Source: Haplodiscus bocki
Taxonomy: Eukaryota
DNA: 64,000 bases
Assembly (NCBI GenBank): GCA_965655095.1
Contig: OZ296651.1
Coordinates: 101,804,001-101,868,000, forward strand
Reading direction: 5' to 3'
Below are positions 19,323-58,389 of the stretch, in pieces (position 1 is the stretch's first letter; each line of letters begins with the position of its first letter). The translations under genes and the position numbers were made by a program. The notes under the pieces were generated by a model. It did not search any database. It was not told the DNA's origin and worked only from the letters and a program-made list of their open reading frames with translations.

Positions 19323-22300
19323 AAGTATCACTTCGGCAGAGAGGAATATAGATTGTTCTTCGGTTTCCTCGAATTTTGCCAGCAACAAGAAAAACGATTG
19401 TCTACATTGCAGCGGACCAAATGATCAAAAACAACGTACGACTTGTCTCATCCCCGAACCTAAGAAATTCGGTATCAACAACACAACACGTGGCAACCAT
19501 TAATCATTTGAACAATTGTTCGTTAGACTTCGTTAAAGAAGACTTTACAGAATTTGGCGACCAAAAATTTTTACGAAAAGCAATCATCAACATACCTACA
19601 GCTGGGTATTTTCAATTGGAGTCTAGCGCAAACTGCATAGATTCCATCCTCCAGTTCACTGAGAACAATAATGTCCAACCAACGTCTACAGAACTAGTTG
19701 AAGCAGCTGAAAACTTTGTCCCGGAGCTACCACCATTTGAATTTATCAAATTGTCCGGCATGATGATCGTAACTGACCCTAACAGATTGCAGGACTCAGA
19801 TTCCGAGATGTGGAAATTTCCTATCAACTGTCATATGGAAGAAGAATAAAATCAATAACGAGTGATTTTCTCGAAAAGTGACATTTTTATTGAAATTAAT
19901 TTTAGGTGTAATTGTGAAAGTATTTATTTGATTTCATTTAACTTTGCGTAACGATTCTTTCTTTCGAAAGATGGAAGATGAACGGCATTGGCGTTCAAAA
20001 TTTAGTATTTGATGGCAATCACAGTGAAAGGTTCGTTTGGAGGCTTTGCAGCTCCACGGACTTATTAGATGGGAAGTTGTATTTTTTTCCAGACAATTAC
20101 AACGTTGTTTCTCATCATATCATGTTTTAGGCTCACCTATATTTTTTCTTGTGACTATATGCCTTTTTGTATATCAGTCTTGTCAGCTGCAGTCGGATAT
20201 AAGGATATAAACTTCCTAGCCCACGGCTACGAGCAAAAAGTTTTTACAAGCTGCTTTCTATTAATCTCCGTTGTTGGTCCTGGCGGATCCGGTTATACTG
20301 AACTAATTTTCTCCATGCTAGTTTATAATACATTGTGACCCAGTTTCAAGAAAAAACGTTCTATTTCTGAAAAAAGTGTCAACTTTTCTTTAACGAGACG
20401 GCAAAAAAACGGAATATAGATAGAGTCTGATACCGTCTCCATTTGAACAAGATCAAGGATCACTGCGGAAGAGAGGAAGACAGCCTGTTTTTCAATTGCC
20501 TCACCCATTGCCAGCAACAACAATAAAATTGTCAGCATTATAGTGGACCGAATGATCAAAAACAATCTACGACTTTTCTCATCCCCGAACCTAAGGAATT
20601 CGGTATCATCAACACAACACGTGGCAACCAGTAATCATTTGAACAATTGTTCGTTAGACTTCGTTAAAGAAGACTTTACAGAATTTGGCGACCAAAAATT
20701 TTTACGAAAAGCAATCATCAACATACCTACAGCTGGGTATTTTCAATTGGAGTCTAGCGCAAACTGCATAGATTCCTTCCTCCAGTTCATTGAGAACAAT
20801 AATGTCCAACCAACATCTACAGAACTAGTTGAAGCAGCTGAAAACTTTGTCCCGGAGCTACCACCACTTGAATTTATCAAATTGTCCGGCATGATGATCG
20901 TAATTGACCCTAACAGATTGCAGGACTCAGATTCCGAGATGTGGAAATTTCCTATCAACTGTCATATGGAAGAAGAATAAAATCAATAACGAGTGATTTT
21001 CTCGAAGAGTGACATTTTTATTGAAAATAATTTTAGGTATAATTATGAGTATTTATTTGATTTCATTTAACTTTGCGTAACGATTCGTTCTTTCGAAAGA
21101 TGGAAGATGAACGGCATTGGCGTTCAAAATTTAGTATTTGATGGCAATCACAGTGAAAGGTTCGTTTGGAGGCTTTGCAGCTCCACGGACTTATTAGATG
21201 GGAAGTTGTATTTTTTTCCAGACAATTACAACGTTGTTTCTCATCATATCATGTTTTAGGCTCACCTATAATTTTTCTTGTGACTATATGCCTTTTTGTA
21301 TATCAGTCTTGTCAGCTGCAGTCGGATATAAGGATATAAACTTCCTAGCCCACGGCTACGAGCAAAAAGTTTTTACAAGCTGCTTTCTATTAATCTCCGT
21401 TGTTGGTCCTGGCGGATCCGGTTATACTGAACTAATTTTCTCCATGTTAGTTTTTAATACATTGTGACCAGTTTCAAAAAAAACGTTCTATTTCTGAAAA
21501 AAATTCAATTTTTCTTTAACGAGATGGCAAAAAAACGGAATATAGATAGAGTCTGATACCCGTCTCCATTTGAACATGATCAAGGATCACTGCGGAAGAG
21601 AGGAAGACAGCCTGTTTTTCAATTGCCTCACCCATTGGCAGCAACAACAATAAAATTGTCAACATTATAGTGGACCGAATGATCAAAAACAATCTACTTT
21701 TCTCATCCCCGAACCTAAGGAATTCGGTATCATCAACACAACACGTGGCAACCAGTAATCATTTGAACAATTGTTCGTAAGACTTCGTTAAAGAAGACTT
21801 TACAGAATTTGGCGACCAAAAATTTTTACGAAAAGCAATCATCAACATACCTACAGCTGGGTATTTTCAATTGGAGTCTAGCGCAAACTGCATAGATTCC
21901 TTCCTCCAGTTCATTGAGAACAATAATGTCCAACCAACATCTACAGAACTAGTTGAAGCAGCTGAAAACTTTGTCCCGGAGCTACCACCACTTGAATTTA
22001 TCAAATTGTCCGGCATGATGATCGTAATTGACCCTAACAGACTGCAGGACTCAGATTCCGAGATGTGGAAATTTCCTATCATCTGTCATATGGAAGAAGA
22101 ATAAAATCAATAACGAGTGATTTTCTCGAAAAGTGACATTTTTATTGAAAATAATTTTAGGAGTAATTGTGAAAGTATTTATTTGATTTCATTTAACTTT
22201 GCGTAACGATTCATTCTTTCGAAAGATGGAAGACGAACGGCATTGGCGTTCAAAATTTAGTATTTGGTGGCAATCACAGTGAAAGGTTCGTTTGGAGGCT

Positions 22301-25300
22301 TTGCAGCTCCACGGACTTATTAGATCGGAAGTTGTATTTTTTCCAGACAATTACAACGTTGTTTCTCATCATATCATGTTTTAGGCTCACCTATAATTTT
22401 TCTTGTGACTATATGCCTTTTTGTATATCAGTCTTGTCAGCTGCAGTCGGATATAAGGATATAAACTTCCTAGCCCACGGCTACGAGCAAAAAGTTTTTA
22501 CAAGCTGCTTTCTACTATTCTCCGTTGTTGGTCCTGGCGGATCCAGTTATACTGAACTAATTTTCTCCATGTTAGTTTTTAATACATTGTGACCAGTTTC
22601 AAAAAAAAACGTTCTATTTCTGAAAAAAATGTCAATTTTTCTTTAACGAGATGGCAAAAAAACGGAATATAGATAGAGTCTGATACCCGTCTCCATTTGT
22701 ACATGATCAAGGATCACTGCGGAAGAGAGGAAGACAGCCTGTTTTTCAATATCCTCACCCATTGCCAGCAACAACAATAAAATTGTCAGCATTATAGTGG
22801 ACCGAATGATCAAAAACAATGTACGACTTTTCTCATCCCCGAACCTAAGAAATTCGGTATCAACAACACAACACGTGGCAACCATTAATCATTTGAACAA
22901 GTGTTCGTTAGATTTCGTTACAGAAGACTTTACAGAATTCGGCGACCAAAAATTTTAACGAAAAGCAATCATCAACATACCTACAGCTGGGTATTTTCAA
23001 TTGGAGTCTAGCGCAAACTGCATAGATTCCTTCCTCCAGTTCACTGAGAACAATAATGTCCAACCAACGTCTACAGAACTAGCTGAAGCAGCTGAAAACT
23101 TTGTCCCGGAGCTACCACCACTTGAATTTATCAAATTGTCCGGCTTGATGATCGTAACTGACCCTAACAGATTGGAGGACTCAGATTCCGAGATGTGGAA
23201 ATTTCCTATCAACTGTCATATGGAAGAAGAATAAAATCAATAACGAGTGATTTTCTCGAAAAGTGGCATTTTTATTGAAATTAATTTTAGGAGTAATTGT
23301 GAAAGTATTTATTTGATTTCATTTAACTTTGCGTAACGATTCATTCTTTCGAAAGATGGAAGATGAACGGCATTGGCGTTCAAAATTTAGTATTTGATGG
23401 CAATCACAGTGAAAGGTTCGTTTGGAGGCTTTGCAGCTCCACGGACTTATTAGATCGGAAGTTGTATTTTTTTTCCAGACAATTACAACGTTGTTTCTCA
23501 TCATATCATGTTTTAGGCTCACCTATAATTTTTCTTGTGACTATATGCCTTTTTGTATATCAGTCTTGTCAGCTGCACTCGGATATAAGGATATAAACTT
23601 CCTAGCCCACGGCTACGAGCAAAATGTTTTTACAAGCTGCTTTCTATTAATCTCCGTTGTTGGTCCTGGCGGATCCGGTTATACTGAACTAATTTTCTCC
23701 ATGTTAGTTTTTAATACATTGTGACCAGTTTAAAAAAAAACGTTCTATTTCTGAAAGAAATGTCAATTTTTCTTTAACGAGATGGCAAAAAAACGGAATA
23801 TAGATAGAGTCTGATACCCGTCTCCATTTGAACATGATCAAGGATCACTGCGGAAGAGAGGAAGACAGCCTGTTTTTCAATATCCTCACCCATTGCCAGC
23901 AACAACAATAAAATTGTCAACATTATAGTGGACCAAATGATCAAAAACAATCTACGACTTTTCTCATCCCCGAACCTAAGAAATTCGGTATCAACAACAC
24001 AACACGTGGCAACCATTAATCATTTGAACAAGTGTTCGTTAGATTTCGTTACAGAAGACTTTACAGAATTCGGCGACCAAAAATTTTAACGAAAAGCAAT
24101 CATCAACATACCTACAGCTGGGTATTTTCAATTGGAGTCTAGCGCAAACTGCATAGATTCCTTCCTCCAGTTCACTGAGAACAATAATGTCCAACCAACG
24201 TCTACAGAACTAGCTGAAGCAGCTGAAAAATTTGTCCCGGAGCTACCACCACTTGAATTTATCAAATTGTCCGGCTTGATGATCGTAACTGACCCTAACA
24301 GATTGGAGGACTCAGATTCCGAGATGTGGAAATTTCCTATCAACTGTCATATGGAAGAAGAATAAAATCAATAACGAATGATTTTCTTGAAAAGTGGCAT
24401 TTTTATTGAAATTAATTTTAGGTGTAATTGTGAAAGTATTTATTTGATTTCATTTAACTTTGCGTAACGATTCATTCTTTCGAAAGATGGAAGATGAACG
24501 GCATTGGCGTTCAAAACTTAGTATTTGATGGCAATCACAGTGAAAAGTTTGTTTGGAGGCTTTGCAGCTCCACGGACTTATTAGATGGGAAGTTGTATTT
24601 TTTTCCAGACAATTACAACGTTGTTTCTCATCATATCATGTTTTAGGCTCACCTATAATTTTTCTTGTGACTATATGCCTTTTTGTATATCAGTCTTGTC
24701 AGCTGCAGTCGGATATAAGGATATAAACTTCCTAGCCCACGGCTACGAGCAAAAAGTTTTTACAAGCGGCTTTCTATTAATCTCCGTTGTTGGTCCTGGC
24801 GGATCCGGTTATACTGAACTAATTTTCTCCATGCTAGTTTTTAATACATTGTGACCCAGTTTCAAGAAAAAACGTTCTATTTCTGAAAAAAATGTTAACT
24901 TTTCTTTAACGAGACGGCAAAAAAAACGGAATATAGATAGAGTCTGATACCCGTCTCCATTTGAACATGATCAAGGATCACTGCGGAAGAGAGGAAGACA
25001 GCCTGTTTTTCAATTGCCTCACCCATTGCCAGCAACAACAATAAAATTGTCAACATTATAGTGGACCGAATGATCAAAAACAATCTACGACTTTTCTCAT
25101 CCCCGAACCTAAGGAATTCGGTATCATCAACACAACACGTGGCAACCAGTAATCTTTTGAACAATTGTTCGTTAGACTTCGTTAAAGAAGACTTTACAGA
25201 ATTTGGCGACCAAAAATTTTTACGAAAAGCAATCATCAACATACCTACAGCTGGGTATTTTCAATTGGAGTCTAGCGCAAACTGCATAGATTCATTCCTC

Positions 25301-28300
25301 CAGTTCATTGAGAACATTAATGTCCAACCAACGTCTACAGAACTAGTTGAAGCAGCTGAAAACTTTGTTCCGGAGCTACCACCACTTGAATTTATCAAAT
25401 TGTCCGGCATGATGATCGTAATTGACCCTAACAGATTGCAGGACTCAGATTCCGAGATGTGAAAATTTCCTATCAACTGTCATATGGAAGAAGAATAAAA
25501 TCAATAACGAGTGATTTTCTCGAAAAGTGACATTTTTATTGAAATTAATTTTAGGAGTAATTGTGAAAGTATTTATTTGACTTCATTTAACTTTGCGTAA
25601 CGATTCGTTCTTTCGAAAGATGGAAGATGAACGGCATTGGCGTTCAAAATTTAGTATTTGATGGCAATCACAGTGAAAGGTTCGTTTGGAGGCTTTGCAG
25701 CTCCACGGACTTATTAGATCGGAAGTTGTATTTTTTTCCAGACAATTACAACGTTGTTTCTCATCATATCATGTTTTAGACTCACCTATAATTTTTCTTG
25801 TGACTATATGCTTTCTTGTATATCAGTCTTGTCAGCTGCAGTCGGATATAAGGATATAAACTTCCTAGCCCACGGCTACGAACAAAAAGTTTTTACAAGC
25901 TGCTTTCTATTAATCTCCGTTGTTGGTCCTGGCTGATCCTGTTATACTGAACTATTTTTCTCCAAGCTATTTTATAATACATTGTGACCCAGTTTCAAGA
26001 AAAAACGTTCTGTTTCTGAAAAAAATGTCAACTTTTCTTTAACGAGACGGCGAAAAAACGGAATATAGATAGAGTCTGATACCCGTCTCCATTTGAACAT
26101 GATCAAGGATCACTGCGGAAGAGAGGAAGACAGCCTGTTTTTCAATTACCTCACCCATTGCCAGCAACAACAATAAAATTGTCAACATTATAGTGGACCG
26201 AATGATCAAAAACAATCTACGACTTTTCTCATCCCCGAACCTAAGGAATTCGGTATCATCAACACAACACGTGGCAACCAGTAATCTTTTGAACAATTGT
26301 TCGTTAGACTTCGTTAAAGAAGACTTTACAGAATTTGGCGACCAAAAATTTTTACGAAAAGCAATCATCAACATACCTACAGCTGGGTATTTTCAATTGG
26401 AGTCTAGCGCAAACTGCATAGATTCCTTCCTCCAGTTCATTGAGAACATTAATGTCGAACCAACGTCTACAGAACTAGTTGAAGCAGCTGAAAACTTTGT
26501 CCCGGAGCTACCACCACTTGAATTTATCAAATTGTCCGGCATGATGATCGTAATTGACCCTAACAGATTGCAGGACTCAGATTCCGAGATGTGGAAATTT
26601 CCTATCAACTGTCATATGGAAGAAGAATAAAATCAATAACGAGTGATTTTCTCGAAAAGTGACATTTTTAATGAAAATAATTTTAGGTATAATTGTGAGT
26701 ATTTGTTTGATTTCATTTAACTTTGCGTAACGATTCGTTCTTTCGAAAGATGGAAGATGAACGGCATTGGAGTTCAAAATTTAGTATTTGATGGCAATCA
26801 CAGTGAAAGGTTCGTTTGGAGGTTTTGCAGCTCCACGGACTTATTATATCGGAAGTTGTATTTTTTTCCAGACAATTACAACGTTGTTTCTCATCATATC
26901 ATGTTTTAAGCTCACCTATAATTTTTATTGTGACTATATGCTTTCTTGTATATCAGTCTTGTCAGCTGCAGTCGGATATAAGGATATAAACTTCCTAGCC
27001 CACGGCTACGAACAAAAAGTTTTTACAAGCTGCTTTCTATTAATCTCCGTTGTTGGTCCTGGCTGATCCTGTTATACTGAACTATTTTTCTCCAAGCTAT
27101 TTTATAATACATTGTGACCCAGTTTCAAGAAAAAACGTTCTGTTTCTGAAAAAAATGTCAACTTTTCTTTAACGAGACGGCGAAAAAACGGAATATAGAT
27201 AGAGTCTGATACCCGTCTCCATTTGAACATGATCAAGGATCACTGCGGAAGAGAGGAAGACAGCCTGTTTTTCAATTACCTCACCCATTGCCAGCAACAA
27301 CAATAAAATTGTCAACATTATAGTGGACCGAATGATCAAAAACAATCTACGACTTTTCTCATCCCCGAACCTAAGGAATTCGGTATCATCAACACAACAC
27401 GTGGCAACCAGTAATCTTTTGAACAATTGTTCGTTAGACTTCGTTAAAGAAGACTTTACAGAATTTGGCGACCAAAAATTTTTACGAAAAGCAATCATCA
27501 ACATACCTACAGCTGGGTATTTTCAATTGGAGTCTAGCGCAAACTGCATAGATTCCTTCCTCCAGTTCATTGAGAACATTAATGTCGAACCAACGTCTAC
27601 AGAACTAGTTGAAGCAGCTGAAAACTTTGTCCCGGAGCTACCACCACTTGAATTTATCAAATTGTCCGGCATGATGATCGTAATTGACCCTAACAGATTG
27701 CAGGACTCAGATTCCGAGATGTGAAAATTTCCTATCAACTGTCATATGGAAGAAGAATAAAATCAATAACGAGTGATTTTCTCGAAAAGTGACATTTTTA
27801 TTGAAATTAATTTTAGGAGTAATTGTGAAAGTATTTATTTGACTTCATTTAACTTTGCGTAACGATTCGTTCTTTCGAAAGATGGAAGATGAACGGCATT
27901 GGCGTTCAAAATTTAGTATTTGATGGCAATCACAGTGAAAGGTTCGTTTGGAGGCTTTGCAGCTCCACGGACTTATTAGATCGGAAGTTGTATTTTTTTC
28001 CAGACAATTACAACGTTGTTTCTCATCATATCATGTTTTAGACTCACCTATAATTTTTCTTGTGACTATATGCTTTCTTGTATATCAGTCTTGTCAGCTG
28101 CAGTCGGATATAAGGATATAAACTTCCTAGCCCACGGCTACGAACAAAAAGTTTTTACAAGCTGCTTTCTATTAATCTCCGTTGTTGGTCCTGGCTGATC
28201 CTGTTATACTGAACTATTTTTCTCCAAGCTATTTTATAATACATTGTGACCCAGTTTCAAGAAAAAACGTTCTGTTTCTGAAAAAAATGTCAACTTTTCT

Positions 28301-31300
28301 TTAACGAGACGGCGAAAAAACGGAATATAGATAGAGTCTGATACCCGTCTCCATTTGAACATGATCAAGGATCACTGCGGAAGAGAGGAAGACAGCCTGT
28401 TTTTCAATTACCTCACCCATTGCCAGCAACAACAATAAAATTGTCAACATTATAGTGGACCGAATGATCAAAAACAATCTACGACTTTTCTCATCCCCGA
28501 ACCTAAGGAATTCGGTATCATCAACACAACACGTGGCAACCAGTAATCTTTTGAACAATTGTTCGTTAGACTTCGTTAAAGAAGACTTTACAGAATTTGG
28601 CGACCAAAAATTTTTACGAAAAGCAATCATCAACATACCTACAGCTGGGTATTTTCAATTGGAGTCTAGCGCAAACTGCATAGATTCCTTCCTCCAGTTC
28701 ATTGAGAACATTAATGTCGAACCAACGTCTACAGAACTAGTTGAAGCAGCTGAAAACTTTGTCCCGGAGCTACCACCACTTGAATTTATCAAATTGTCCG
28801 GCATGATGATCGTAATTGACCCTAACAGATTGCAGGACTCAGATTCCGAGATGTGGAAATTTCCTATCAACTGTCATATGGAAGAAGAATAAAATCAATA
28901 ACGAGTGATTTTCTCGAAAAGTGACATTTTTAATGAAAATAATTTTAGGTATAATTGTGAGTATTTGTTTGATTTCATTTAACTTTGCGTAACGATTCGT
29001 TCTTTCGAAAGATGGAAGATGAACGGCATTGGAGTTCAAAATTTAGTATTTGATGGCAATCACAGTGAAAGGTTCGTTTGGAGGTTTTGCAGCTCCACGG
29101 ACTTATTACATCGGAAGTTGTATTTTTTTCCAGACAATTACAACGTTGTTTCTCATCATATCATGTTTTAAGCTCACCTATAATTTTTATTGTGACTATA
29201 TGCTTTTTTGGATATCAGTCTTGTCAGCTGCAGTCGGATATAAGGATATGAACTTCCTAGCCCACGGCTACGAGCAAAATGTTTTTACAAGCTGCTTTCT
29301 ATTAATCTCCGTTGTTGGTCCTGGCGGATCCGGTTATACTGAACTAATTTTCTCCATGTTAGTTTTTAATACATTGTGAGCAGTTTAAAAAAAAACGTTC
29401 TTTTTCTGAAAAAAATGTCAATTTTTCTTTAACGAGATGGCAAAAAAACGGAATATAGATAGAGTCTGATACCCGTCTCCATTTGAACATGATCAAGGAT
29501 CACTGCGGAAGAGAGGAAGACAGCCTGTTCTTCAATTGCCTCACCCATTGCCAGCAACAACAATAAAATTGTCAACTTTATAGTGGACCGAATGATCAAA
29601 AACAATCTACGACTTTTCTCATCCCCGAACCTAAGGAATTCGGTATCATCAACACAACACGTGGCAACCAGTAATCATTTGAACAATTGTTCGTTAGACT
29701 TCGTTAAAGAAGACTTTACAGAATTTGGCGACCAAAAATTTTTACGAAAAGCAATCGTCAACATACCTACAGCTGGGTATTTTCAATTGGAGTCTAGCGC
29801 AAACTGCATAGACTCCTTCCTCCAGTTCACTGAGAACAATAATGTCCAACCAAGGTCTACAGAACTAGTTGAAGCAGCTGAAAACTTTGTCCCGGAGCTA
29901 CCACCACTTGAATTTATCAAATTGTCCGGCATGATGATCGTAACTGACCCAAACAGATTGTAGGACTCAGATTCCGAGATGTGGAAATTTTCTATCAACT
30001 GTCATATGGAAGAAGAATAAAATCAATAACGAGTGATTTTCTCGAAAAGTGACATTTTTATTGAAAATAATTTTAGGTATAATTGTGAGTATTTATTTGA
30101 TTTCATTTAACTTTGCGTAACGATTCGTTCTTTCGAAAGATGGAAGATGAACGGCATTGGCGTTCAAAATTTAGTATTTGATGGCAATCACAGTGAAAGG
30201 TTCGTTTGGAGGCTTTGCAGCTCCACGGACTTATTAGATGGGATTTTGTATTTTTTTCCAGACAATTACAACGTTGTTTCTCATCATATCATGTTTTAGG
30301 CTCACCTATAATTTTTCTTGTGACTATATGCCTTTTTGTATATCAGTCTTGTCAGCTGCAGTCGGATATAAGGATATAAACTTCCTAGCCCACGGCTACG
30401 AGCAAAAAGTTTTTACAAGCTGCTTTCTATTAATCTCCGTTGTTGGTCCTGGCAGATCCGGTTATACTGAACTAATTTTCTCCATGTTAGTTTTTAATAC
30501 ATTGTGACCAGTTTCGAAAAAAAACGTTCTATTTCTCAAAAAAATGTCAATTTTTCTTTAACGAGATGGCAAAAAAACGGAATATAGATAGAGTCTGATA
30601 CCCGTCTCCATTTGAACATGATCAAGGATCACTGCGGAAGAGAGGAAGACAGCCTGTTTTTCAATTACCTCACCCATTGCCAGCAACAACAATAAAATTG
30701 TCAACATTATAGTGGACCGAATGATCAAAAACAATCTACGACTTTTCTCATCCCCGAACCTAAGGAATTCGGTATCATCAACACAACACGTGGCAACCAG
30801 TAATCATTTGAACAATTGTTCGTTAGACTTCGTTAAAGAAGACTTTACAGAATTTGGCGACCAAAAATTTTTACGAAAAGCAATCATCAACATACCTACA
30901 GCTGGGTATTTTCAATTGGAGTCTAGCGCAAACTGCATAGATTCCTTCCTCCAGTTCATTGAGAACAATAATGTCCAACCAACATCTACAGAACTAGTTG
31001 AAGCAGCTGAAAACTTTGTCCCGGAGCTACCACCACTTGAATTTATCAAATTGTCCGGCATGATGATCGTAATTGACCCTAACAGGTTGCAGGACTCAGA
31101 TTCTGAGATGTGGAAAGTTCCTATCAACTGTCATATGGAAGAAGAATAAAATCAATAACGAGTGATTTCCTCGAAAAGTGACATTTTTATTGAAAGTAAT
31201 TTTAGGTATAATTGTGAGTATTTATTTGATTTAATTTAACTTTGCGTAACGATTCGTTATTTCGAAAGATGGAAGATGAACGGCATTGGCGTTCAAAATT

Positions 31301-43300: not shown

Positions 43301-46300
43301 ACCAAAAACTCTTACTAAAAGAAATCATCAACATGCCGACAACTGGGTATATTCAATTGGAGTCTAGCGCAAACTGCATAGATTCCTTCCTCCAGTTCAT
43401 TGAGAACAATAATGTCCAACCAACATCTACGGAACTAGTTGAAGCAGCTGAAAACATTGTCCCGGAGCTACCACCACTTGAATTTATCAAATTGTCCGGC
43501 ATGATGATCGTAATTGACCCTAACAGACTGCAGGACTCAGATTCCGAGATGTGGAAATTTCCTATCAACTGTCATATGGAAGAAGAATAAAATCAATAAC
43601 GAGTGATTTTCTCGAAAAGTGACATTTTTATTGAAAATAATTTTAAGTATAATTGTGAGTATTTACTTGATTTCATTTAACTTTGCGTAACGATTCGTTC
43701 TTTCGAAAGATGGAAGATGAACGGCATTGGCGTTCAAAATTTAGTATTTGATGGCAATCACAGTGAAAGGTTCGTTTGGAGGCTTTGCAGCTCCACGGAC
43801 TTATTAGATGGGAAGTTGTATTTTTTTCCAGACAATTACAACGTTGTTTCTCATCATATCATGTTTTAGGCTCACCTATAATTTTTCTTGTGACTATATG
43901 ACTTTTTGTATATCAGTCTTGTCAGCTGCAGTCGGATATAAGGATATAAACTTCCTAGCCCACGGCTACGAGCAAAAAGTTTTTACAAGCTGCTTTCTAT
44001 TAATCTCCGTTGTTGGTCCTGGCGGATCCGGTTATACTGAACTAATTTTCTCCATGTTAGTTTTTAATACATTGTGACCAGTTTCAAAAAAAAAAACGTT
44101 CTTTTTCTGAAGAAAATGTCAACTTTTCTTTAACGAGATGGCAAAAAAACGGAATATAGATAGAGTCTGATACCCTTCTCCATTTTAGCATGATCAAGGA
44201 TCACTGCGGAAGAGAGGAAGACAGCCTGTTTTTCAATTGCCTCACCCATTGCCATCAACAACAATAAAATTGTCAACATTATAGTGGACCAAATGATCAA
44301 AAACAATCTACGACTTTTTTCATCCCCGAACCTAAGGAATTCGTATCATCAACACAACACGTGGCAACCAGTAATCATTTGAACATTTGTTCGTTAGACT
44401 TCGTTAAAGAAGACTTTACAGAATTGGGCGACCAAAAATTTTTACGAAAAGCAATCATCAACATACCTACAGCTGGGTATTTTCAATTGGAGTCTAGCGC
44501 AAACTGCATAGATTCCTTCCTCCAATTCATTTAGGACAGTGATGTCAAATCAACGTCTACGCAATTTGATAAAGGAGGCGAAAACTTTGCCGTCGGAGCT
44601 ACCACAACTAATTGAACCCATCAAGTTATGCGGCATCGATTATCGTATCTCACCGAAACGGATTGCAAAACTCAACTTCCGAGAAGATATGGATTTTTCC
44701 TATCTACCACCATATGGAGGAAGAACAAAGTCAAAAGCGAGTGACTTCCCGAAGAAAGACACTTTCAATTTGAATATATTTTACTTACCATTGTGAAAGT
44801 ATCTGTTTTATTTGTTTTAACTTTGCGTAAATATTCATTCTTCCGAAAGATGGAAGACCGAACAATTGACTGCGAAGACGGCAGTGGCGTTCAAAAATTA
44901 AGTATTGGATGACAATCATAGCCAAAATTCCATTTGGAGGCTTTGCAGATCCACGAAATTACATACATCGGAAGTTGTATTTTTTTCTAGGCAATGACAA
45001 CGTTGATTCTCATCGTATCATGTTTTAATAGGCTCACCTTCTATAAGTTTCCCTGTGAGGATTTGCCATTTTGGGTATCAGTCTTGTCAGCTGTAGTCGG
45101 ATATATACTTCCTAGCCCACTGTTAGGAACAAATTAAATTTTACAAGCTACCGTCTATTCATGTCCGTTGTTTGTCCTGGCGGATCCGGTTAGACTGGAC
45201 TGACTTTCTCCATGTTAGTTTTTTATTGTGTCCCAGTTTCATAAAAACGTTCTATGTCTAAGGATGAATGTCAATCTTCCCTTAACCAGATGACTAAAAA
45301 ATGAAGAACTTGACACCTGTCTCCATTTCAACATGATCAGTGATCACTCGGGAATTGGGGAAGCCAGCCTGTTTTTCAATTGCCTCAACCATTGGCAGCA
45401 ACACCAATAAAATTGTCAACATTATAGCTGACCAATTGATCAAAGACAATCTACGAATTTTCTCATCCCCGAACCTAAGGAATTCGGTATCATCAACACA
45501 ACACGTGGCAACCAGTAATCATTTGAACAGTTATTCTAAAAAAGACTTTACAGATTTTGGCGACCAAAAATTGTTACGAAAAGCAATCATCAACATGCCT
45601 ACAGCTAGGTATTTTCAATTGGATTCTAGCGCAAACTGCATAGATTCCTTCCTCCAATTCATTTAGGACAGTGATGTCAAATCAACGTGTACGCAATTTG
45701 ATAAAGGAGGCGAAAACTTTGCCGTCGGAGCTACCACAACTAATTGAACCCATCAAGTTATGCGGCATCGATTATCGTATCTCACCGAAACGGATTGCAA
45801 AACTCAACTTCCGAGAAGATATGGATTTTTCCTATCTACCACCATATGGAGGAAGAACAAAGTCAAAAGCGAGTGACTTCCCGAAGAAAGACACTTTCAA
45901 TTTGAATATATTTTACTTACCATTGTGAAAGTATCTGTTTTATTTGTTTTAACTTTGCGTAACTATTCATTCTTCCGAAAGATGGAAGACCGAACAATTG
46001 ACTGCGAAGACGGCAGTGGCGTTCAAAAATTAAGTATCGGATGACAATCATAGCCAAAATTCCATTTGGAGGCTTTGCAGATCCACGAAATTACATACAT
46101 CGGAAGTTGTATTTTTTTCTAGGCAATGACAACGTTGATTCTCATCGTATCATGTTTTAATAGGCTCACCTTCTATAATTTTCCCTGTGAGGATTTGCCA
46201 TTTTGGGTATCAGTCTTGTCAGCTGTAGTCGGATATATACTTCCTAGCCCACTGTTAGGAACAAATTAAATTTTACAAGCTACCGTCTATTCATGTCCGT

Positions 46301-49300
46301 TGTTTGTCCTGGCGGATCCGGTTAGACTGGACTGACTTTCTCCATGTTAGTTTTTTATTGTGTCCCAGTTTCATAAAAACGTTCTATGTCTAAGGATGAA
46401 TGTCAATCTTCCCTTAACCAGATGACTAAAAAATGAAGAACTTGACACCTGTCTCCATTTCAACATGATCAGTGATCACTCGGGAATTGGGGAAGCCAGC
46501 CTGTTTTTCAATTGCCTCAACCATTGGCAGCAACAACAATAAAATTGTCAACATTATAGCTGACCAAATGATCAAAGACAATCTACGAATTTTCTCATCC
46601 CCGAACCTAAGGAATTCGGTATCATCAACACAACACGTGGCAACCAGTAATCATTTGAACAGTTATTCTAAAAAAGTTTTTACAGAATTTGCCGACCAAA
46701 AACTGTTACGAAAAGCAATCATCAACATGCCTACAGCTAGGTATTTTCAATTGGATTCTAGCGCAAACTGCATAGATTCCTTCCTCCAATTCATTTAGGA
46801 CAGTGATGTCAAATCAACGTGTACGCAATTTGATAAAGGAGGCGAAAACTTTGCCGTCGGAGCTACCACAACTAATTGAACCCATCAAGTTATGCGGCAT
46901 CGATTATCGTATCTCACCGAAACGGATTGCAAAACTCAACTTCCGAGAAGATATGGATTTTTCCTATCTACCACCATATGGAGGAAGAACAAAGTCAAAA
47001 GCGAGTGACTTCCCGAAGAAAGACACTTTCAATTTGAATATATTTTACTTACAATTGTGAAAGTATCTGTTTTATTTCTTTTAACTTTGCGTAACTATTC
47101 ATTCTTCCGAAAGATGGAAGACCGAACAATTGACTGCGAAGACGGCAGTGGCGTTCAAAAATTAAGTATTGGATGACAATCATAGCCAAAATTCCATTTA
47201 GAGGCTTTGCAGATCCACGAAATTACATACATCGGAAGTTGTATTTTTTTCTAGGCAATGACAACGTTGATTCTCATCGTATCATGTTTTAATAGGCTCA
47301 CCTTCTATAAGTTTCCCTGTGAGGATTTGCCATTTTGGGTATCAGTCTTGTCAGTTGTAGTCGGATATATACTTCCTAGCCCACTTTTAGGAACAAATTG
47401 AATTTTACAAGCTACCATCTATTCATGTCCGTTGTTTGTCCTGGCGGATCTGGTTAGACTGGACTGACTTTCTCCATGTTAGTTTTTTACTGTGTCCCAG
47501 TTTCATAGAAACGTTCTATTTCTAAGGATGAATGTCAATCTTCCCTTAACCAGATGACTAAAAAATGAAGAACTTGACACCTGTCTCCATTTCAACATGA
47601 TCAGTGATCACTCGGGAATTGGGGAAGCCAGCCTGTTTTTCAATTGCCTCAACCATTGGCAGCAACAACAATAAAATTGTCAACATTATAGCTGACCAAA
47701 TGATCAAAGACAATCTACGATTTTTCTCATCCCCGAACCTAAGGAATTCGGTATCATCAACACAACACGTGGCAACCAGTAATCATTTGAACAGTTATTC
47801 TAAAAAAGTTTTTACAGAATTTGCCGACCAAAAACTGTTACGAAAAGCAATCATCAACATGCCTACAGCTAGGTATTTTCAATTGGATTCTAGCGCAAAC
47901 TGCATAGATTCCTTCCTCCAATTCATTTAGGACAGTGATGTCAAATCAACGTGTACGCAATTTGATAAAGGAGGCGAAAACTTTGCCGTCGGAGCTACCA
48001 CAACTAATTGAACCCATCAAGTTATGCGGCATCGATTATCGTATCTCACCGAAACGGATTGCAAAACTCAACTTCCGAGAAGATATGGATTTTTCCTATC
48101 TACCACCATATGGAGGAAGAACAAAGTCAAAAGCGAGTGACTTCCCGAAGAAAGACACTTTCAATTTGAATATATTTTACTTACAATTGTGAAAGTATCT
48201 GTTTTATTTCTTTTAACTTTGCGTAACTATTCATTCTTCCGAAAGATGGAAGACCGAACAATTGACTGCGAAGACGGCAGTGGCGTTCAAAAATTAAGTA
48301 TTGGATGACAATCATAGCCAAAATTCCATTTAGAGGCTTTGCAGATCCACGAAATTACATACATCGGAAGTTGTATTTTTTTCTAGGCAATGACAACGTT
48401 GATTCTCATCGTATCATGTTTTAATAGGCTCACCTTCTATAAGTTTCCCTGTGAGGATTTGCCATTTTGGGTATCAGTCTTGTCAGTTGTAGTCGGATAT
48501 ATACTTCCTAGCCCACTTTTAGGAACAAATTGAATTTTACAAGCTACCATCTATTCATGTCCGTTGTTTGTCCTGGCGGATCTGGTTAGACTGGACTGAC
48601 TTTCTCCATGTTAGTTTTTTACTGTGTCCCAGTTTCATAGAAACGTTCTATTTCTAAGGATGAATGTCAATCTTCCCTTAACCAGATGACTAAAAAATGA
48701 AGAACTTGACACCTGTCTCCATTTCAACATGATCAGTGATCACTCGGGAATTGGGGAAGCCAGCCTGTTTTTCAATTGCCTCAACCATTGGCAGCAACAA
48801 CAATAAAATTGTCAACATTATAGCTGACCAAATGATCAAAGACAATCTACGATTTTTCTCATCCCCGAACCTAAGGAATTCGGTATCATCAACACAACAC
48901 GTGGCAACCAGTAATCATTTGAACAGTTATTCTAAAAAAGACTTTACAGAATTTGGCGACAAAAATTGTTACGAAAAGCAATCATCAACATGCCTACAGC
49001 TAGGTATTTTCAATTGGATTCTAGCGCAAACTGCATAGATTCCTTCCTCCAATTCATTTAGGACATTAATGTCCAACCAACGTCTACAGAATTAGTTGAA
49101 GCAGCTGCAAACTTTGTTCCGGAGCTACCACCACTTGAGTTTATCAAATTGTCCGGCATGATGATTGTAATTGACCCTAACAGATTGCAGGACTCAGATT
49201 CCGAGATGTGGAAATTTCCTATCAACTGTCATATGGAAGAAGAATAAAATCAATAACGAGTGATTTTCTCGAAAAGTGACATTTTTATTGAAAATAATTT

Positions 49301-52300
49301 TAAGTATAAATGTGAGTATTTATTTGATTTCATTTAACTTTGCGTAACGATTCGTTCTTTCGAAAGATGGAAGATGAACGGCATTGGCGTTCAAAATTTA
49401 GTATTTGATGGCAATCACAGTGAAAGGTTCGTTTGGAGGCTTTGCAGCTCCACGGACTTATTAGATGGGAAGTTGTATTTTTTTCCAGACAATTACAACG
49501 TTGTTTCTCATCATATCATGTTTTAGGCTCACCTATAATTTTTCTTGTGACTATATGACTTTTTGTATATCAGTCTTGTCAGCTGCAGTCGGATATAAGG
49601 ATATAAACTTCCTAGCCCACGTCTACGAGCAAAAAGTTTTTACAAGCTGCTTTCTATTAATCTCCGTTGTTGGTCCTGGCGGATCCGGTTATACTGAACT
49701 AATTTTCTCCATGTTAGTTTTTAATACATTGTGACCAGTTTCAAAAAAAAACGTTCTTTTTCTGAAGAAAATGTCAACTTTTCTTTAACGAGATGGCAAA
49801 AAAACGGAATATAGATAGAGTCTGATACCCTTCTCCATTTTAGCATGATCAAGGATCACTGCGGAAGAGAGGAAGACAGCCTGTTTTTCAATTGCCTCAC
49901 CCATTGCCATCAACAACAATAAAATTGTCAACATTATAGTGGACCAAATGATCAAAAACAATCTACTTTTTTCATCCCCGAACCTAAGGAATTCGTATCA
50001 TCAACACAACACGTGGCAACCAGTAATCATTTGAACATTTGTTCGTTAGACTTCGTTAAAGAAGACTTTACAGAATTGGGCGACCAAAAATTTTTACGAA
50101 AAGCAATCATCAACATACCTACAGCTGGGTATTTTCAATTGGAGTCTAGCGCAAACTGCATAGATCCCTTCCTCCAGTTCATTGAGAACAATAATGTCCA
50201 ACCAACGTCTACAGAACTAGTTGAAGCAGCTGAAAACTTTGTCCCGGAGCTACCACCACTTGAATTTATCAAATTGTCCGGCATGATGATCGTAATTGAC
50301 CCCAACAGATTGCGGGACTCAGATTCCGAGACGTGGAAATTTCCTATCAACTGTCATATGGAAGAAGAATGAAATCAATAACGAGTGATTTTATCGAAAA
50401 GTGACATTTTTATTGAAATTAATTTTAGGTATAATTGTGAAACTATTTATTTGATTTCATATAACTTTGCGTAACGATTCATTCTTTCGAAAGATGGAAG
50501 ATGAACGGCATTGGCGTTCAAAATTTAGTATTTGATGGCAATCACAGTGAAAGGTTGGTTTGGAGGCTTTGCAGCTCCACGGACTTATTAGATGGGAATT
50601 TGCATTTTTTTTCCAGACAATTACAACGTTGTTTCTCATCATATGATGTTTTAGGCTCACCTATAATTTTTCTTGTGACTATATGCCTTTTTGTATATCA
50701 GTCTTGACAGCTGCAGTCGGATATAAGGATATAAACTTCCTAGCCCACGGCTACGAACAAAAAGTTTTTACAAGCTGCTTTCTATTAATCTCCGTTGTTG
50801 GTCCTGGCGGATAAGGTTATACTGAACTAATTTTCTCCATGTTAGTTTTCAATACATTGTGACCCAGTTTCAAAAAAAACGTTCTATTTCTCAAAAAAAT
50901 GTCAACTTTTCTTTAACGAGTTGGCAAAAAAACGGAATATAGATAGAGTCTGATACCCGTCTCCATTTGAACATGATCAAGGATCACTGCGGAAGAGAGG
51001 AAGACAGCCTGTTTTTCAATTGCCTCACCCATTGCCAGCAACAACAATAAAATTGTCAAAATTAAAGTGGACGAAATGATCAAAAACAATCTACGACTTT
51101 TCTCATCCCCGAACCTAAGGATTTCGGTATCATCAACACAACACGTGGCAACCAGTAATCAATTGAACCGTTGTCTTTATAAAGACTTTACAGAATTTGG
51201 CGACCAAAAACTCTTACTAAAAGAAATCATCAACATGCCGACAGCTGGGTATATTCAATTGGAGTCTAGCGCAAACTGCATAGATTCCTTCCTCCAATTC
51301 ATTTAGGACAGTGATGTCAAATCAACGTGTACGCAATTTGATAAAGGAGCCAAAAACTTTGCCGCCGGAGCTACCACAACTAATTGAACCCATCGGGTTA
51401 TGCGGCATCGATTATGGTATCTCACAGAAACGGATTTGCAGAACTCAAATTCCGAGAAGATATGGATTTTTCCTATCTACCACCATATGGAGGAAGAACA
51501 AAGTCAAAAGCGAGTGACTTCCCGAAGAAAGACACTTTCAATTTGAATATATTTTACTTACAATTGTGAAAGTATCTGTTTTATTTCTTTTAACTTTGCG
51601 TAACTATTCATTCTTCCGAAAGATGGAAGACCGAACAATTGACTGCGAAGACGGCAGTGGCGTTCAAAAATTAAGTATTGGATGACAATCATAGCCAAAA
51701 TTCCATTTGGAGGCTTTGCAGATCCACGAAATTACATACATCGGAAGTTGTATTTTATTCTAGGCAATGACAACGTTGATTCTCATCGTATCATGTTTTA
51801 ATAGGCTCACCTTCTATAAGGTTCCCTGTGAGGATTTGCCATTTTGGGTATCAGTCTTGTCAGCTGTAGTCGGATATATACTTCCTAGCCCACTGTTAGG
51901 AACAAATTAAATTTTACAAGCTACCGTCTTTTCATGTCCGTTGTTTGTCCTGGCGGATCCGGTTAGACTGGACTGACTTTCTCCATGTTAGTTTTTGATT
52001 GTGTTCCAGTTTCATAAAAACGTTCTATTTCTAAAGAAGAATGTCACTCTTCCCTTAACCAGATGGCTGAAAAAATGAAGAACTTGACACCTGTCTCCAT
52101 TTCAACATGATCAGTGGTCACTGCGGAATTGGGGAAGCCAGCCTGTTTTTCAATTGCCTCAACCATTGCCAGCAACAACAATAAAATTGTCAACAAAATA
52201 GCGGACCAAATGATCAAAGACAATCTACGACTTTTCTCATCGGCGAACCTAAAGAATTCGGTATCATCAACACAACATGTGGCAACCAGTAATCAATTGA

Positions 52301-53698
52301 ACCGTTGTCTTTATAAGGACTTTACAGAATTTGGCGACCAAAAACTCTTACGAAAAGCAATCATCAACATACCTACAGCCGGGTATTTCCAATTGGAGTC
52401 GAGCGCAAACTGCATAGGTTCCTTCCTCCAGTTCATTGAGAACAGTAATGTCAAACCAACGTCTACAGAACTAGTTGAAGCAGCGGAAAACCTTGTCCAG
52501 GAGCGACCAGCACTTGAAGTCATCAAATTATCTGGCATGATGATCGTATTTCACCTGAACAGATTGCAGGATTCAAATCCCAAGAAGATGTGGAATATTC
52601 GTTATTTTGTCATATGGAAGAAGAACAAAATCAAAAACGAGTGATTTGCCTTAAAAATGACCTTTTTATTGAATTTTATTTTACGTATATAATTGTGAAA
52701 GGATCTTTTTGATTTCTTTTAAGTTTGCCTAATGATTCAATCTTTCCAAGGATGGAAAACAGAACAGATGGCCGCCAAGACGGCATTGGCGTTAAAATTT
52801 TAGTTTTTGATGACAATCTTAGTGAGAGGTTCATTTGGAGGTTTTGCAGCTAAACGGAATTACTAGATCGGAAGTTATATTTTTTTCCAGACAATTACAA
52901 CGTTGTTTCTCATCATATCATGTTTTATTAGGCTCACCTATAGTTTATCTTGTTATGCCACCGGAGCTACCTTCATAAGAACCCATCATATTGTCCGGCC
53001 TCGTTAATCGTATCGTGTCCTACACAAACAGATTGCAGGAGAAGTCCAATTCCGGAAATTTGTTTTGGAATTTGCCTGTTTACCATATGGAAGAAGAACA
53101 AATTGTCAATACCGAGCCATTTTCCGAAAAGTGGCTCTTTTAGTTGAATATATTTCACGTATAATTGTGAAAGTATCCGTTTGTTTTCATTCAACTATGC
53201 CGAACTCTTTTTTTTTCGAAAGATGGAGGATCAAGTAGTTGACTCCGAAGTCAGCGTTGGCGTTGAAAATTTAGTATTTGAAGAGATAGTGAAAAGTCCT
53301 CTTGGTGGTAGTTCCACGAATTTACCTGGATCGGAAGTTGTATTTTTCTTGAGGCATTTACTCATCATATCATGTTTTTTACGGTTTACCATCTAGAAAT
53401 CTCCCTGTAAGGTAATGCCATTTTGGGCTTCAGTCTTGTCAGCTGTAGTCGGAGTTATACTTCCTAGCCCATGGCTAAGAACAAATTAATTTTTACAAGC
53501 AACCGTCTACTTATGTCCTTTGTTGGTCCTGGTGGATCCAATGAGACTAGACTAAGTTTCTCTATTTTACTTTCTAATACCCTGCGTCCCAGTTTCAGTA
53601 AAGCGTTCTCTTTCTAAAAAGATTGTCAGCCTCCTTTAACAGGTTGACTAAAAATTTGATTATATAGTTTGACACCTCTGTTCGTTACAACATGAACA
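19323..53698 (+). repeat. Tandem array of a ~1.13-kb virus-derived unit: 29 full units, a divergent truncated 30th and a partial 31st; subfamilies A and B
   Basis: Unit starts at ~19323, 20457, 21584, 22711, 23842, 24975, 26107, 27237, 28369, 29497, 30626, 31754, 32884, 34025, 35153, 36282, 37413, 38548, 39692, 40809, 41952, 43067, 44198, 45340, 46472, 47604, 48736, 49853, 50981 and 52114. The ORF track repeats the same peptides at this period. Confidence 0.98.
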
Positions 53699-54150
53699 GA
53701 AAGCTAGAAGATTGTTTACTAGTTTTTGGTGGTTCAGGTGAAGAGATTTTTCAGGCAAAAAACATATGAAACTTGTTGACGCCGGAAGGGACAAATAAGT
53801 TCATTGCCCTTCTGTGAAATAATTTATTTCTTCAGATTAGGTGGTCGTGTACGGCTTACGACTAACCCCAATACAACCCACTTCTTTTTGTTCAAGTCAT
53901 CACGCGATACACTACAATTTATTGACTTTGGCCAGCAGCTGAAGAAAGTTTATTTCTTACGAGATTTTTGTAACAGATCAACTTCGCAACCCTACGGGCA
54001 TTTGTTGATTGACTTGGGTCCTGAAACTAGCCAGTGCCTACAATATTGTTCTAACATTACAGCTTCGGTTCTAGTCATTTTTCATTGACATTCTGAGCTT
54101 GCTAAGGGGAGAAATATAACGAATTATGGATAAAAGCGAGCTTACGTTGA
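53477..54150 (+). pseudogene. FtsK/A32-like packaging ATPase (copy 2, the only full-length remnant, starting in the last array copy)
   Basis: NRLLMSFVGPGGSNET (Walker A), LEDCLLVFGGSGEEIF (Walker B region), NTTHFFLFKSSRDTLQFIDFGQQL...PYGHLLIDLGPETSQCLQYCSNIT. Confidence 0.9.
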
Positions 54151-54159
54151 AGCGTTGGC

Positions 54160-54960: not shown

Positions 54961-54989
54961 AGACGCTGGGGTCAAGTCTAACGACCAGA

Positions 54990-55860: not shown

Positions 55861-55861
55861 G

Positions 55862-56715: not shown

Positions 56716-57080
56716 CAAAGCTATTATTCACGCAAAGCTATCAAGCCTCATTTCACAGGTCATGTTTGCCTTTGAAGTGAAGGGTTTGGGTCGTTAGCAC
56801 TTGGAGTTGAAGGCATTGCATAAGCAAATGAGAACAAAGTTCTTTTGCCTTCTGCTCTATCATACGGAAAGAAGTTTTCGGTTGACAGTCTGGCAGAAGT
56901 TTTGTTGGTTGCTACCATGAGGAAGTTATTCAATCGCTCAGCGACAGCTGTTGTGATGAAATGAGCCAAAAAACAAATAGGAGGCGTTGGGCGTAGAAGA
57001 AGCATAAAGTCCAGAAATAGTGGACGAAAAAACAAACAACCGAGAAGTTGGTCAGATTTTTTCTCTGAAGTTAGAAATGT
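56712..57080 (+). pseudogene. Small basic core-like protein (pVII/PX-like)
   Basis: SYYSRKAIKPHFTGHV...GFGSLALGV...KKQIGGVGRRRSIKSRNSGRK...RSWSDFF. Basic, Gly-containing, lies between penton and hexon. Confidence 0.55.
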
Positions 57081-58370: not shown

Positions 58371-58389
58371 AATTGGCATCAAAAAACTC

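What the first reader, a model, noticed from the sequence alone, without database searches (positions are those of the whole stretch)
19323..53698. A ~34-kb satellite array born in place from an endogenous Maverick/adintovirus packaging module
Seen: ~30 head-to-tail copies of 1.13 kb. The left flank continues into single-copy viral ORF-X sequence, and the last copy runs into the rest of the ATPase, integrase, capsid genes, protease and PolB. The array is therefore an internal expansion of one provirus. Each unit is ORF-X C-terminus + a complete small 2-TM gene + the ATPase up to just before Walker B. The provirus is heavily decayed, yet neighbouring units differ by only a few bases, so amplification or homogenisation happened long after the virus died. 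Known: TE-derived satellites exist and can become centromeric or piRNA-producing; I do not recall a described case built from Polinton coding sequence. Inference: this is a nascent (peri)centromeric macrosatellite, or an amplified antiviral small-RNA template against related Mavericks.
Basis: partly seen in the sequence, partly recalled or inferred. Interest (0 to 1): 0.9.

Follow-up and report, generated by a model that had tools for sequence, protein, structure and literature searches.

The report
Tandem array inside a dead Maverick-like provirus
A 1.13-kb piece from the middle of a long-dead, capsid-encoding virus-like element has been copied head-to-tail about 30 times where it sits; it is a clear but fairly ordinary case of a mobile-element fragment becoming a single-locus macrosatellite, with no sign so far that the array does anything.

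Summary
The array is real: 19,323-53,697, period ~1,130 bp, 30.4 copies, no gaps. It is an in-place amplification of one internal segment of a decayed virus-like element. Relatives carry that segment once, flanked by the same sequences as here, and the junction inside each unit is a composite of the two array boundaries. Downstream lie the rest of the ATPase and a double jelly-roll capsid gene, all broken. Integrase, protease and PolB were not found. The units are not uniform. Two families are ~20% apart, the terminal copy is 26-30% from both, and neighbours differ at 10-265 positions, so the array is old, not nascent. It is still turning over: a second version of the locus with 99.94% identical flanks differs by whole units. 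Divergence shows no coding signal. The array is unique to this locus, shares no 20-mers with the other element copies held, and CpG is not depleted. Most likely this is a neutral macrosatellite. A Polinton-CDS-derived satellite has already been reported in locust.

The parts
10899..13881 (+). Second, older, partial copy of the same element family (upstream gene, ORF-a, small gene, ATPase residues 1-201). The unit segment occurs once here (about 12,268-13,424). Broken: the ATPase has at least 1 frame change and 6 in-frame stops.
   Evidence: tblastn of relatives' ORF pieces and natural ATPase relatives. No DNA-level similarity to copy 1.
18270..19322 (+). Single-copy element sequence upstream of the array (3' part of the gene upstream of ORF-a), belonging to the amplified provirus
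   Evidence: Colinear protein-level matches to L002, L003 and L004
19323..19829 (+). Partial left-boundary copy of the unit (phase 624-1132). 92.3% identical to family A, 79.5% to family B.
19830..52608 (+). 29 full units of 1,123-1,147 bp. Family A = units 1-11, 21, 27. Family B = units 13-17, 23-25. Chimeric units = 12, 18, 19, 20, 22, 26, 28, 29. Order of types: AAAAAAAAAAAaBBBBBbabAaBBBbAab.
52609..53083 (+). Truncated, degenerate unit (phase 1 to about 345 plus about 130 bp that does not align). About 80% identical to both families.
53084..53697 (+). Terminal, non-homogenised copy (phase 3-623). 70% identical to A, 74% to B. Runs straight on into the rest of the ATPase.
53480..54205 (+). 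A32-type packaging ATPase pseudogene of the provirus (covers residues 1-242 of natural relatives). Broken: at least 2 frame changes and 6 in-frame stops; P-loop motif degenerate.
   Evidence: Relatives score 23.9-28.0 bits on PF04665 against a cut-off of 22.8.
54356..55160 (+). Broken: at least 2 frame changes and 9 stops.
55859..56702 (+). Pseudogene matching the relatives' ~286-290-aa ORF just upstream of the capsid gene (candidate penton protein, untested). Broken: at least 3 frame changes and 3 stops.
57044..58625 (+). Double jelly-roll major capsid protein pseudogene. Broken: at least 1 frame change and 17 in-frame stops.
   Evidence: tblastn E 5e-67 to L004's intact ORF. AF2 model of relative P0020, pTM 0.76. 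Foldseek matches to Sputnik, mavirus, PBCV-1 and iridovirus capsids at E 1e-16 to 1e-17, and to bracovirus, adomavirus and adintovirus proteins. Counts.
61553..62728 (+). Two further decayed stretches colinear with L004 ORFs downstream of the capsid gene, function unknown. The first has 7 in-frame stops.

Best explanation
A neutral, single-locus macrosatellite. One internal ~1.13-kb segment of an already inactive Maverick-like endogenous virus was duplicated in tandem once. The segment runs from just upstream of ORF-a, through a small membrane-protein gene, to residue ~76 of the packaging ATPase. The duplication then grew and shrank by unequal exchange and gene conversion between misaligned units. 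Over a long time the interior split into two families (A and B). Each was kept 96-100% uniform within itself, while the two edge copies escaped homogenisation and drifted away. Exchanges between A and B take place in a ~300-bp stretch that the families still share, and these produce the chimeric units. Turnover continues today, as shown by whole-unit differences between two versions of the locus and by two-unit duplications with 0-1 differences. Shown: structure, in-place origin, gene content, decay, non-coding divergence, order of events, and structural difference between the two versions. Inferred: the mechanism (unequal crossing-over or conversion, as opposed to for example rolling-circle amplification) and the absence of function.
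For: Array and periodicity. In-place origin: relatives L002, L003, L004 and the window's own copy 2 carry the unit segment once, colinear with both flanks. The unit-internal junction combines the right-terminal upstream side with the left-boundary downstream side. Gene content: the ATPase map stops at residue ~76 inside the array, with Walker B at residue 80. Pox_A32 scores are above cut-off in relatives. The 92-aa protein has two hydrophobic segments. Capsid fold. Dead before and during growth: 0 of 29 units have an intact P-loop or an unbroken small gene. A/B substitutions show no 3-base periodicity, there are 68 indel columns, and ts:tv is 85:71. ORF-a variable sites fall 6/8/7 by codon position. 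Order of events: the terminal copy is 26-30% from A and B, A-B K2P is 0.20, within-family K2P is 0.02-0.03, and the haplotype flanks differ by 0.0006. Exchange: all A/B switch points lie in or after phase 650-950, where A-B divergence falls to 2-10%. Ongoing turnover: u6 = u8, and u18/u20 differ at 1 base. The other version of the locus reads ...AAAAAaBBBBBBbAaBBbAab against ...AaBBBBBbabAaBBBbAab here, with flanks 99.94% identical. Single locus: array ORFs occur on only two contigs among 5.8 billion protein clusters.
Against: No direct evidence on transcription, small RNAs or chromatin, so a function cannot be excluded. The ~300-bp stretch shared by A and B could reflect DNA-level constraint rather than exchange. 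The differences between the two versions could be partly assembly error in one contig. The 20% A/B gap could also come from conversion by another element copy rather than divergence in place. Only called ORFs were searched, so arrays elsewhere that lack called ORFs would be missed.
Confidence: 0.75

Rival explanations
1. The array is a small-RNA (piRNA/siRNA) source locus that the host uses against related, still-active elements of the same family.
For: The family is multi-copy, with many near-identical and apparently intact capsid and ATPase genes in the same kind of assemblies (clusters of 22-60 members at 90% identity or more), so there could be something to defend against. EVE-derived small-RNA loci are known in arthropods (for example PMC10675110).
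Against: The array shares no exact 20-mers or 24-mers with the four other element copies held (L002-L004 and window copy 2). The best DNA identity is 68-75% over 120-440 bp. The array covers only 1.1 kb of the element. Divergence is neutral. No expression data are available.
Confidence: 0.1
2. The array is a nascent centromeric or pericentromeric satellite.
For: Tandem arrays with block structure and local homogenisation are typical of centromeric satellites.
Against: It is only ~34 kb long, with unique sequence on both sides in one contig. Unit ORFs occur on just two contigs, which are two versions of one locus. CpG is not depleted. The founding event is old, not nascent.
Confidence: 0.03
3. 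The copy number or unit order is partly an assembly artefact, with a much shorter real array.
For: Long near-identical repeats are error-prone to assemble. Two pairs of units are identical or differ at 1 base. The two contigs disagree in unit order.
Against: Most neighbouring units differ at 10-45 or more positions, which accurate long reads can resolve. A second contig independently holds at least 21 units with the same overall A/B pattern, and its last six units are 98.6-99.9% identical to the window's. There are no N gaps.
Confidence: 0.07
4. Family B did not diverge in place but was brought in by gene conversion or recombination with another copy of the element family, after which A and B blocks were shuffled.
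For: A and B are 11-35% apart over most of the unit, with a sharply bounded shared stretch. The genome holds many family copies.
Against: A and B are closer to each other than either is to any other copy held: L002 is 71-75% identical over only part of the unit, and copy 2 and L003 show no DNA-level match. Both are 26-30% from the terminal copy, as expected for sister lineages.
Confidence: 0.1

Closest known systems
Satellites and tandem arrays derived from transposable elements (e.g. Tetris foldback transposon in Drosophila virilis, PMC4079207; retrotransposon-derived satellites in Lathyrus, PMC7004042)
   Same: A fragment of a mobile element is amplified into a head-to-tail array that then evolves by concerted evolution.
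   Different: Those cases usually start from repeats already inside the element (internal tandem repeats, LTR or UTR regions) and spread to many loci. Here the unit is former coding sequence spanning three genes, the array sits at a single locus, and the unamplified boundary copies are still in place.
Locust satellite LmiSat34-299, reported to have homology with the CDS of a Polinton (PMC4935994)
   Same: A tandem repeat whose monomer derives from Polinton/Maverick coding sequence.
   Different: That monomer is 299 bp and was found by read clustering, with no parent locus described. Here the unit is 1.13 kb and is seen inside its parent provirus with both junctions.
Polinton-1_DPe amplification on Drosophila pseudoobscura and D. 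affinis Y chromosomes (PMC9248874)
   Same: Large local gain of Polinton-derived DNA in one genomic compartment.
   Different: That case involves hundreds of copies of the 15.8-kb element, attributed to mobilisation and accumulation. It is not a tandem array of an internal fragment.
Coding-sequence-derived macrosatellites such as human D4Z4 (from my own knowledge, not tested here)
   Same: A kilobase-scale unit containing a former gene, a single locus or few loci, and copy-number polymorphism through unequal exchange.
   Different: D4Z4 keeps an open reading frame and has known chromatin and disease roles. Here no reading frame is under constraint.
Maverick/Polinton elements and adintoviruses (parent element)
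   Same: Double jelly-roll capsid and A32/FtsK-type packaging ATPase in one same-strand block. The capsid model's best viral match is a bracovirus-borne protein, with adintovirus and adomavirus capsids also high. Mavericks are abundant in acoels (4.5% of the Praesagittifera genome, PMC6451197).
   Different: No protein-primed PolB, rve integrase, adenain-like protease or terminal inverted repeats could be found in the window or in the loci held.

Membership tests
Maverick/Polinton (adintovirus-like) element | Double jelly-roll major capsid protein | tested here: met
   Window 57,044-58,625 matches L004's intact ORF (E 5e-67). The AF2 model of family member P0020 (pTM 0.76) matches Sputnik, mavirus, PBCV-1 and iridovirus capsids at E 1e-16 to 1e-17, and bracovirus, adomavirus and adintovirus proteins. 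The window's copy is a pseudogene.
Maverick/Polinton (adintovirus-like) element | FtsK/HerA-superfamily (A32-like) packaging ATPase | tested here: met
   Natural relatives of the window's ATPase score 23.9-28.0 bits on PF04665 Pox_A32 (cut-off 22.8), with Walker A at residue 17 and a Walker B-type motif at residue 80. The window's copies are pseudogenes.
Maverick/Polinton (adintovirus-like) element | Penton (single jelly-roll minor capsid) protein | tested here: inconclusive
   A conserved ~290-aa ORF lies just upstream of the capsid gene (window 55,859-56,702), but it has no Pfam or PDB sequence match.
Maverick/Polinton (adintovirus-like) element | Adenain-like cysteine protease | tested here: inconclusive
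   No Peptidase_C5 or other protease signal in 30 window pieces or in the relatives' ORFs. Sequence-only tests may miss a diverged protease.
Maverick/Polinton (adintovirus-like) element | Protein-primed family B DNA polymerase | tested here: inconclusive
   No DNA_pol_B_2 signal in the window or in the genes of L002-L004, including precomputed Pfam. The element may continue past window position 64,000. Further copies were not fetched on purpose.
Maverick/Polinton (adintovirus-like) element | Retroviral-type (rve) integrase | tested here: inconclusive
No rve was found elsewhere in the held DNA.
Maverick/Polinton (adintovirus-like) element | Long terminal inverted repeats with 5-6-bp target-site duplication | tested here: inconclusive
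   No inverted repeat links the left and right flanks. The right end of the element is probably outside the window.
Satellite DNA / macrosatellite | Many head-to-tail copies of one unit | tested here: met
   30.4 copies, period ~1,130 bp.
Satellite DNA / macrosatellite | Concerted evolution (copies more alike than their age predicts, edge copies more diverged) | tested here: met
   K2P within families is 0.02-0.03. The left edge copy is 8% away, the right terminal copy 26-30% away, and A-B K2P is 0.20.
Satellite DNA / macrosatellite | High genomic abundance at many loci (classical satellite) | tested here: not met
   Unit ORFs occur on only two contigs, which are two versions of this locus. 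It is therefore a single-locus macrosatellite, with the caveat that only called ORFs were searched.
Centromeric satellite | CENP-A/CenH3 occupancy | not testable with these tools
   Needs chromatin profiling.
EVE-derived small-RNA (piRNA) locus | Production of small RNAs | not testable with these tools
   Needs small-RNA sequencing.
EVE-derived small-RNA (piRNA) locus | Near-perfect complementarity to related elements | tested here: not met
   No shared 20-mers or 24-mers with L002, L003, L004 or window copy 2. Only four copies were sampled.

The most novel reading that the evidence does not exclude
The array is kept, or at least used, by the host as a template for small RNAs against the packaging module of a Maverick-like virus family that is still abundant in the same genome. 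Its rapid unit turnover would then be part of an arms race rather than drift.
Probability: 0.08. Interest if true: 0.7.

Novelty: new member of a known kind. Interest (0 to 1): 0.35.

Why it matters
This is an unusually legible case of how a satellite starts. The parent provirus, both unamplified boundary copies, the composite founding junction, two diverged unit families with mapped exchange points, and a second version of the locus differing by whole units are all visible in one place. That makes it a good teaching and modelling case for unequal exchange and concerted evolution in kilobase-unit arrays. It also shows that large DNA-virus-like elements, not only retroelements and small DNA transposons, can seed such arrays. 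As a by-product, a widespread animal protein family labelled only 'uncharacterized protein F54H12.2-like' turns out to have a double jelly-roll capsid fold, which would improve annotation of Maverick-like elements in acoels and other invertebrates. Nothing here points to a new mechanism or a host function.

Tried and rejected
- **TRF:** found nothing because its longest period is 500. Periodicity was measured by k-mer spacing instead.
- **Pfam on 10 unit pieces and 30 flank pieces:** nothing significant. At that point I suspected the viral annotation was imagined. It was rescued only by finding better-preserved relatives.
- **Rfam and tRNA scans:** nothing.
- **PHROGs scan of the relatives' ORFs:** nothing.
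- **PDB sequence searches with the capsid, ATPase piece, 304-aa ORF and 290-aa ORF:** nothing meaningful.
- **ORF-a structure:** low confidence (pLDDT 55, pTM 0.31), and the fold search was uninformative.
- **Literature search for 'F54H12.2':** no papers.
- **Coding constraint on the units or on ORF-a:** rejected.
- **Terminal inverted repeats:** none found.
- **ORF-a as the C-terminus of a long ORF-X:** several relatives start with Met at the start of the conserved core, so it may be a small gene wholly inside the unit. Unresolved.
- **Host identity:** not established. The only named relatives are from the acoel Convolutriloba macropyga at ~55% identity.
Full report
**1. The observation**

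The window has no N. TRF cannot see periods above 500 and reported only two microsatellites. K-mer spacing shows a dominant period of 1127-1133 bp, confined to about 19.3-53 kb. BLAST of one unit against the window gives:
- a partial copy at 19,323-19,829
- 29 full units from 19,830 to 52,608
- a truncated degenerate unit at 52,609-53,083
- a terminal copy at 53,084-53,697

That is 34,375 bp or 30.4 copies.

**2. The units are not uniform**

The pairwise matrix and painting with 224 family-diagnostic columns show two families. A comprises units 1-11, 21 and 27. B comprises units 13-17 and 23-25.
- Within-family K2P is 0.031 (A) and 0.023 (B); between families it is 0.20.
- Units 12, 18, 19, 20, 22, 26, 28 and 29 are chimeras, and unit 17 carries a short A-type patch. 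The switch points all fall in or just after phase ~650-950 (phase 0 = position 30,001).
- In that stretch A-B divergence drops to 2-10%, the within-family level, against 11-35% elsewhere.
- Neighbouring units differ at 10-265 positions, median 45.
- Units 6 and 8 are identical and units 18 and 20 differ at one base, which points to recent two-unit duplications.

**3. What the unit is**

Pfam found nothing in the unit's open pieces or in the 30 longest flank pieces. No Walker A is visible in the unit ORFs. At that stage the viral annotation looked unsupported.

An exhaustive HMMER search with the longest unit piece gave only 12 hits among 1.84 billion proteins. The word-indexed search gave only proteins from two contigs. 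Looking up where three of the distant hits are encoded returned metagenome-assembly contigs L002-L004.

tblastn of their stop-free ORF pieces against the window showed a colinear multi-gene element:
- L004 ~9.5-9.7 kb matches the window just left of the array.
- L004 ~9.9-11.0 kb matches the unit.
- L004 10.9-20.3 kb matches window 53.86-62.7 kb.

The window's left flank (10,899-13,881) also holds a second, much older partial copy in which the unit segment occurs once.

**4. Gene content**

*ATPase.* Relatives' ORFs over the unit-equivalent segment show a canonical Walker A and a Walker B-type motif. The longest ATPase piece retrieves 1,174 relatives, typically 230-243 aa, many with precomputed PF04665. 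A direct scan gives Pox_A32 at 23.9-28.0 bits against a cut-off of 22.8. In 242-aa relatives Walker A starts at residue 17 and the Walker B-type motif at residue 80. Matches inside the array reach residue ~76 at most, while the terminal copy (53,480-54,205) covers residues 1-242.

*Small gene.* Between ORF-a and the ATPase the relatives encode a conserved 92-aa protein with two hydrophobic segments. Its full span lies in the unit, but it is unbroken in 0 of 29 units.

Several relatives start with Met at the start of that core, so it may be a small gene wholly inside the unit. Its structure model was poor and the fold search uninformative.

**5. The parent element**

L004's intact 573-codon ORF (window 57,044-58,625, E 5e-67) belongs to a large family of ~436-aa proteins. 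The only public name for them is 'uncharacterized protein F54H12.2-like' from the acoel Convolutriloba macropyga.
- An AF2 model (pTM 0.76) matches double jelly-roll capsids: Sputnik 2.5e-17, mavirus 6e-16, PBCV-1 and iridovirus.
- In the viral library it matches a Cotesia bracovirus protein (22% identity, 1.9e-24), adomavirus LO7 and an adintovirus capsid protein.
- With the A32-type ATPase this is the morphogenetic module of a Maverick/Polinton-like virus.
- Integrase, protease and PolB were not found in the window or in the relatives' ORFs, nor were terminal inverted repeats.
- The element probably runs past the end of the window.

Membership in Maverick/Polinton is therefore likely but not demonstrated.

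**6. Decay (counts only)**

| Gene | Frame changes (at least) | In-frame stops |
|---|---|---|
| ATPase, terminal copy | 2 | 6 |
| ATPase, copy 2 | 1 | 6 |
| Capsid | 1 | 17 |
| 304-aa ORF equivalent | 2 | 9 |
| 290-aa ORF equivalent | 3 | 3 |
| 231-aa ORF equivalent | 0 | 7 |

No unit, nor the terminal copy, nor copy 2 has an intact P-loop motif.

**7. Origin and history**

The junction inside each unit is a composite. Its upstream side aligns with the right-terminal copy and its downstream side with the left boundary, as expected from one founding tandem duplication.
- The terminal copy is 26-30% from both families, A-B K2P is 0.20, and within-family K2P is 0.02-0.03.
- A/B substitutions show no 3-base periodicity, there are 68 indel columns, and ts:tv is 85:71.
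- The ORF-a core is open in only 9 units, all family A, with variable sites 6/8/7 by codon position.

All visible divergence is thus non-coding. The amplified sequence was already dead, and the array is old rather than nascent.

**8. A second version of the locus**

L001, L005 and L006 are overlapping stretches of ENA contig ctg76783 (no conflicts).
- Its single-copy right flank is 99.94% identical to the window, and its last six units are 98.6-99.9% identical.
- Further in, the unit order differs by whole units...AAAAAaBBBBBBbAaBBbAab against ...AaBBBBBbabAaBBBbAab here.
- Its left end was not reached, so total copy number cannot be compared.

This indicates recent unequal exchange, unless one assembly is wrong.

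**9. The functional ideas**

- The array shares no 20-mers or 24-mers with L002-L004 or copy 2.
- It is confined to one locus in the searched collection.
- CpG observed/expected is 0.92, against 0.88-0.99 in the flanks.
- Nothing supports a centromeric or small-RNA role, though expression and chromatin cannot be tested here.

**10. Prior art**

- A locust satellite (LmiSat34-299) with homology to a Polinton CDS has been published (PMC4935994).
- Polinton-1_DPe is heavily amplified on Drosophila Y chromosomes (PMC9248874).
- Satellites derived from transposable elements are well known (PMC4079207, PMC7004042).
- Mavericks make up 4.5% of an acoel genome with 39.1% GC (PMC6451197), close to this window's ~38%.

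**11. Conduct and slips**

- L002-L004 were fetched by looking up relatives of the unit ORF before I knew they held copies of a virus-like element.
- After the capsid fold result I fetched no further element copies. The only later look-ups (L005, L006) were more of the allelic contig of this same decayed locus.
- Searches printed per-match bounds for decayed genes (one search also printed frames), from which rough places of frame changes could be inferred. I noticed this afterwards and printed counts only from then on.
Family-diagnostic columns were used only for counts and for painting units.
- No contig looked human.

Noticed in passing
window 10899-13881: A second, much older partial copy of the same element family on the same strand, 4.4 kb upstream of the amplified provirus. 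It carries the unit segment once and is similar only at protein level.
   Followed up: partly
window 4145-5305: Nested inverted repeats (arms of 93, 37 and 157 nt, 78-83% complementary), forming a foldback or MITE-like structure of about 1.2 kb.
   Followed up: no
window ~450-1740: Degenerate direct repeats with ~170-180-bp (and ~505-bp) spacing, 60-76% identical.
   Followed up: no
window units, phase ~650-950 of each (e.g. 30651-30950): A ~300-bp stretch that families A and B share at within-family similarity and where all A/B switches occur. It coincides with the conserved core of ORF-a and is the only part of the unit still alignable at DNA level to L002 (71-75%).
   Followed up: partly
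L004 1-3492 and 12173-15870: A 3.5-kb stretch of an element copy (part of the capsid block) recurs at 97% identity 12.2 kb away, so larger-scale duplication also affects this element family.
   Followed up: no
L003 12796-14132 (minus) and 16781-17251: An inverted partial copy of the element's upstream part next to the forward copy, and an unrelated reverse-transcriptase (RVT_1) gene nearby.
   Followed up: no
protein family of P0020 / P0071 (relatives of window 57044-58625): A large animal protein family labelled only 'uncharacterized protein F54H12.2-like' has a double jelly-roll capsid fold. No Pfam model hits it and no paper in the library mentions the name.
   Followed up: partly
L006 962-6108 (other version of the array): Gene calls of 208 aa on the minus strand recur in its A-type units, while the window's A units have only 111-115-aa minus-strand ORFs there. 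These are probably spurious calls on repeated sequence.
   Followed up: no
window 19323-53697: GC skew is consistently negative across the array (-0.02 to -0.10) and turns positive in the right flank. CpG is not depleted anywhere in the window.
   Followed up: partly
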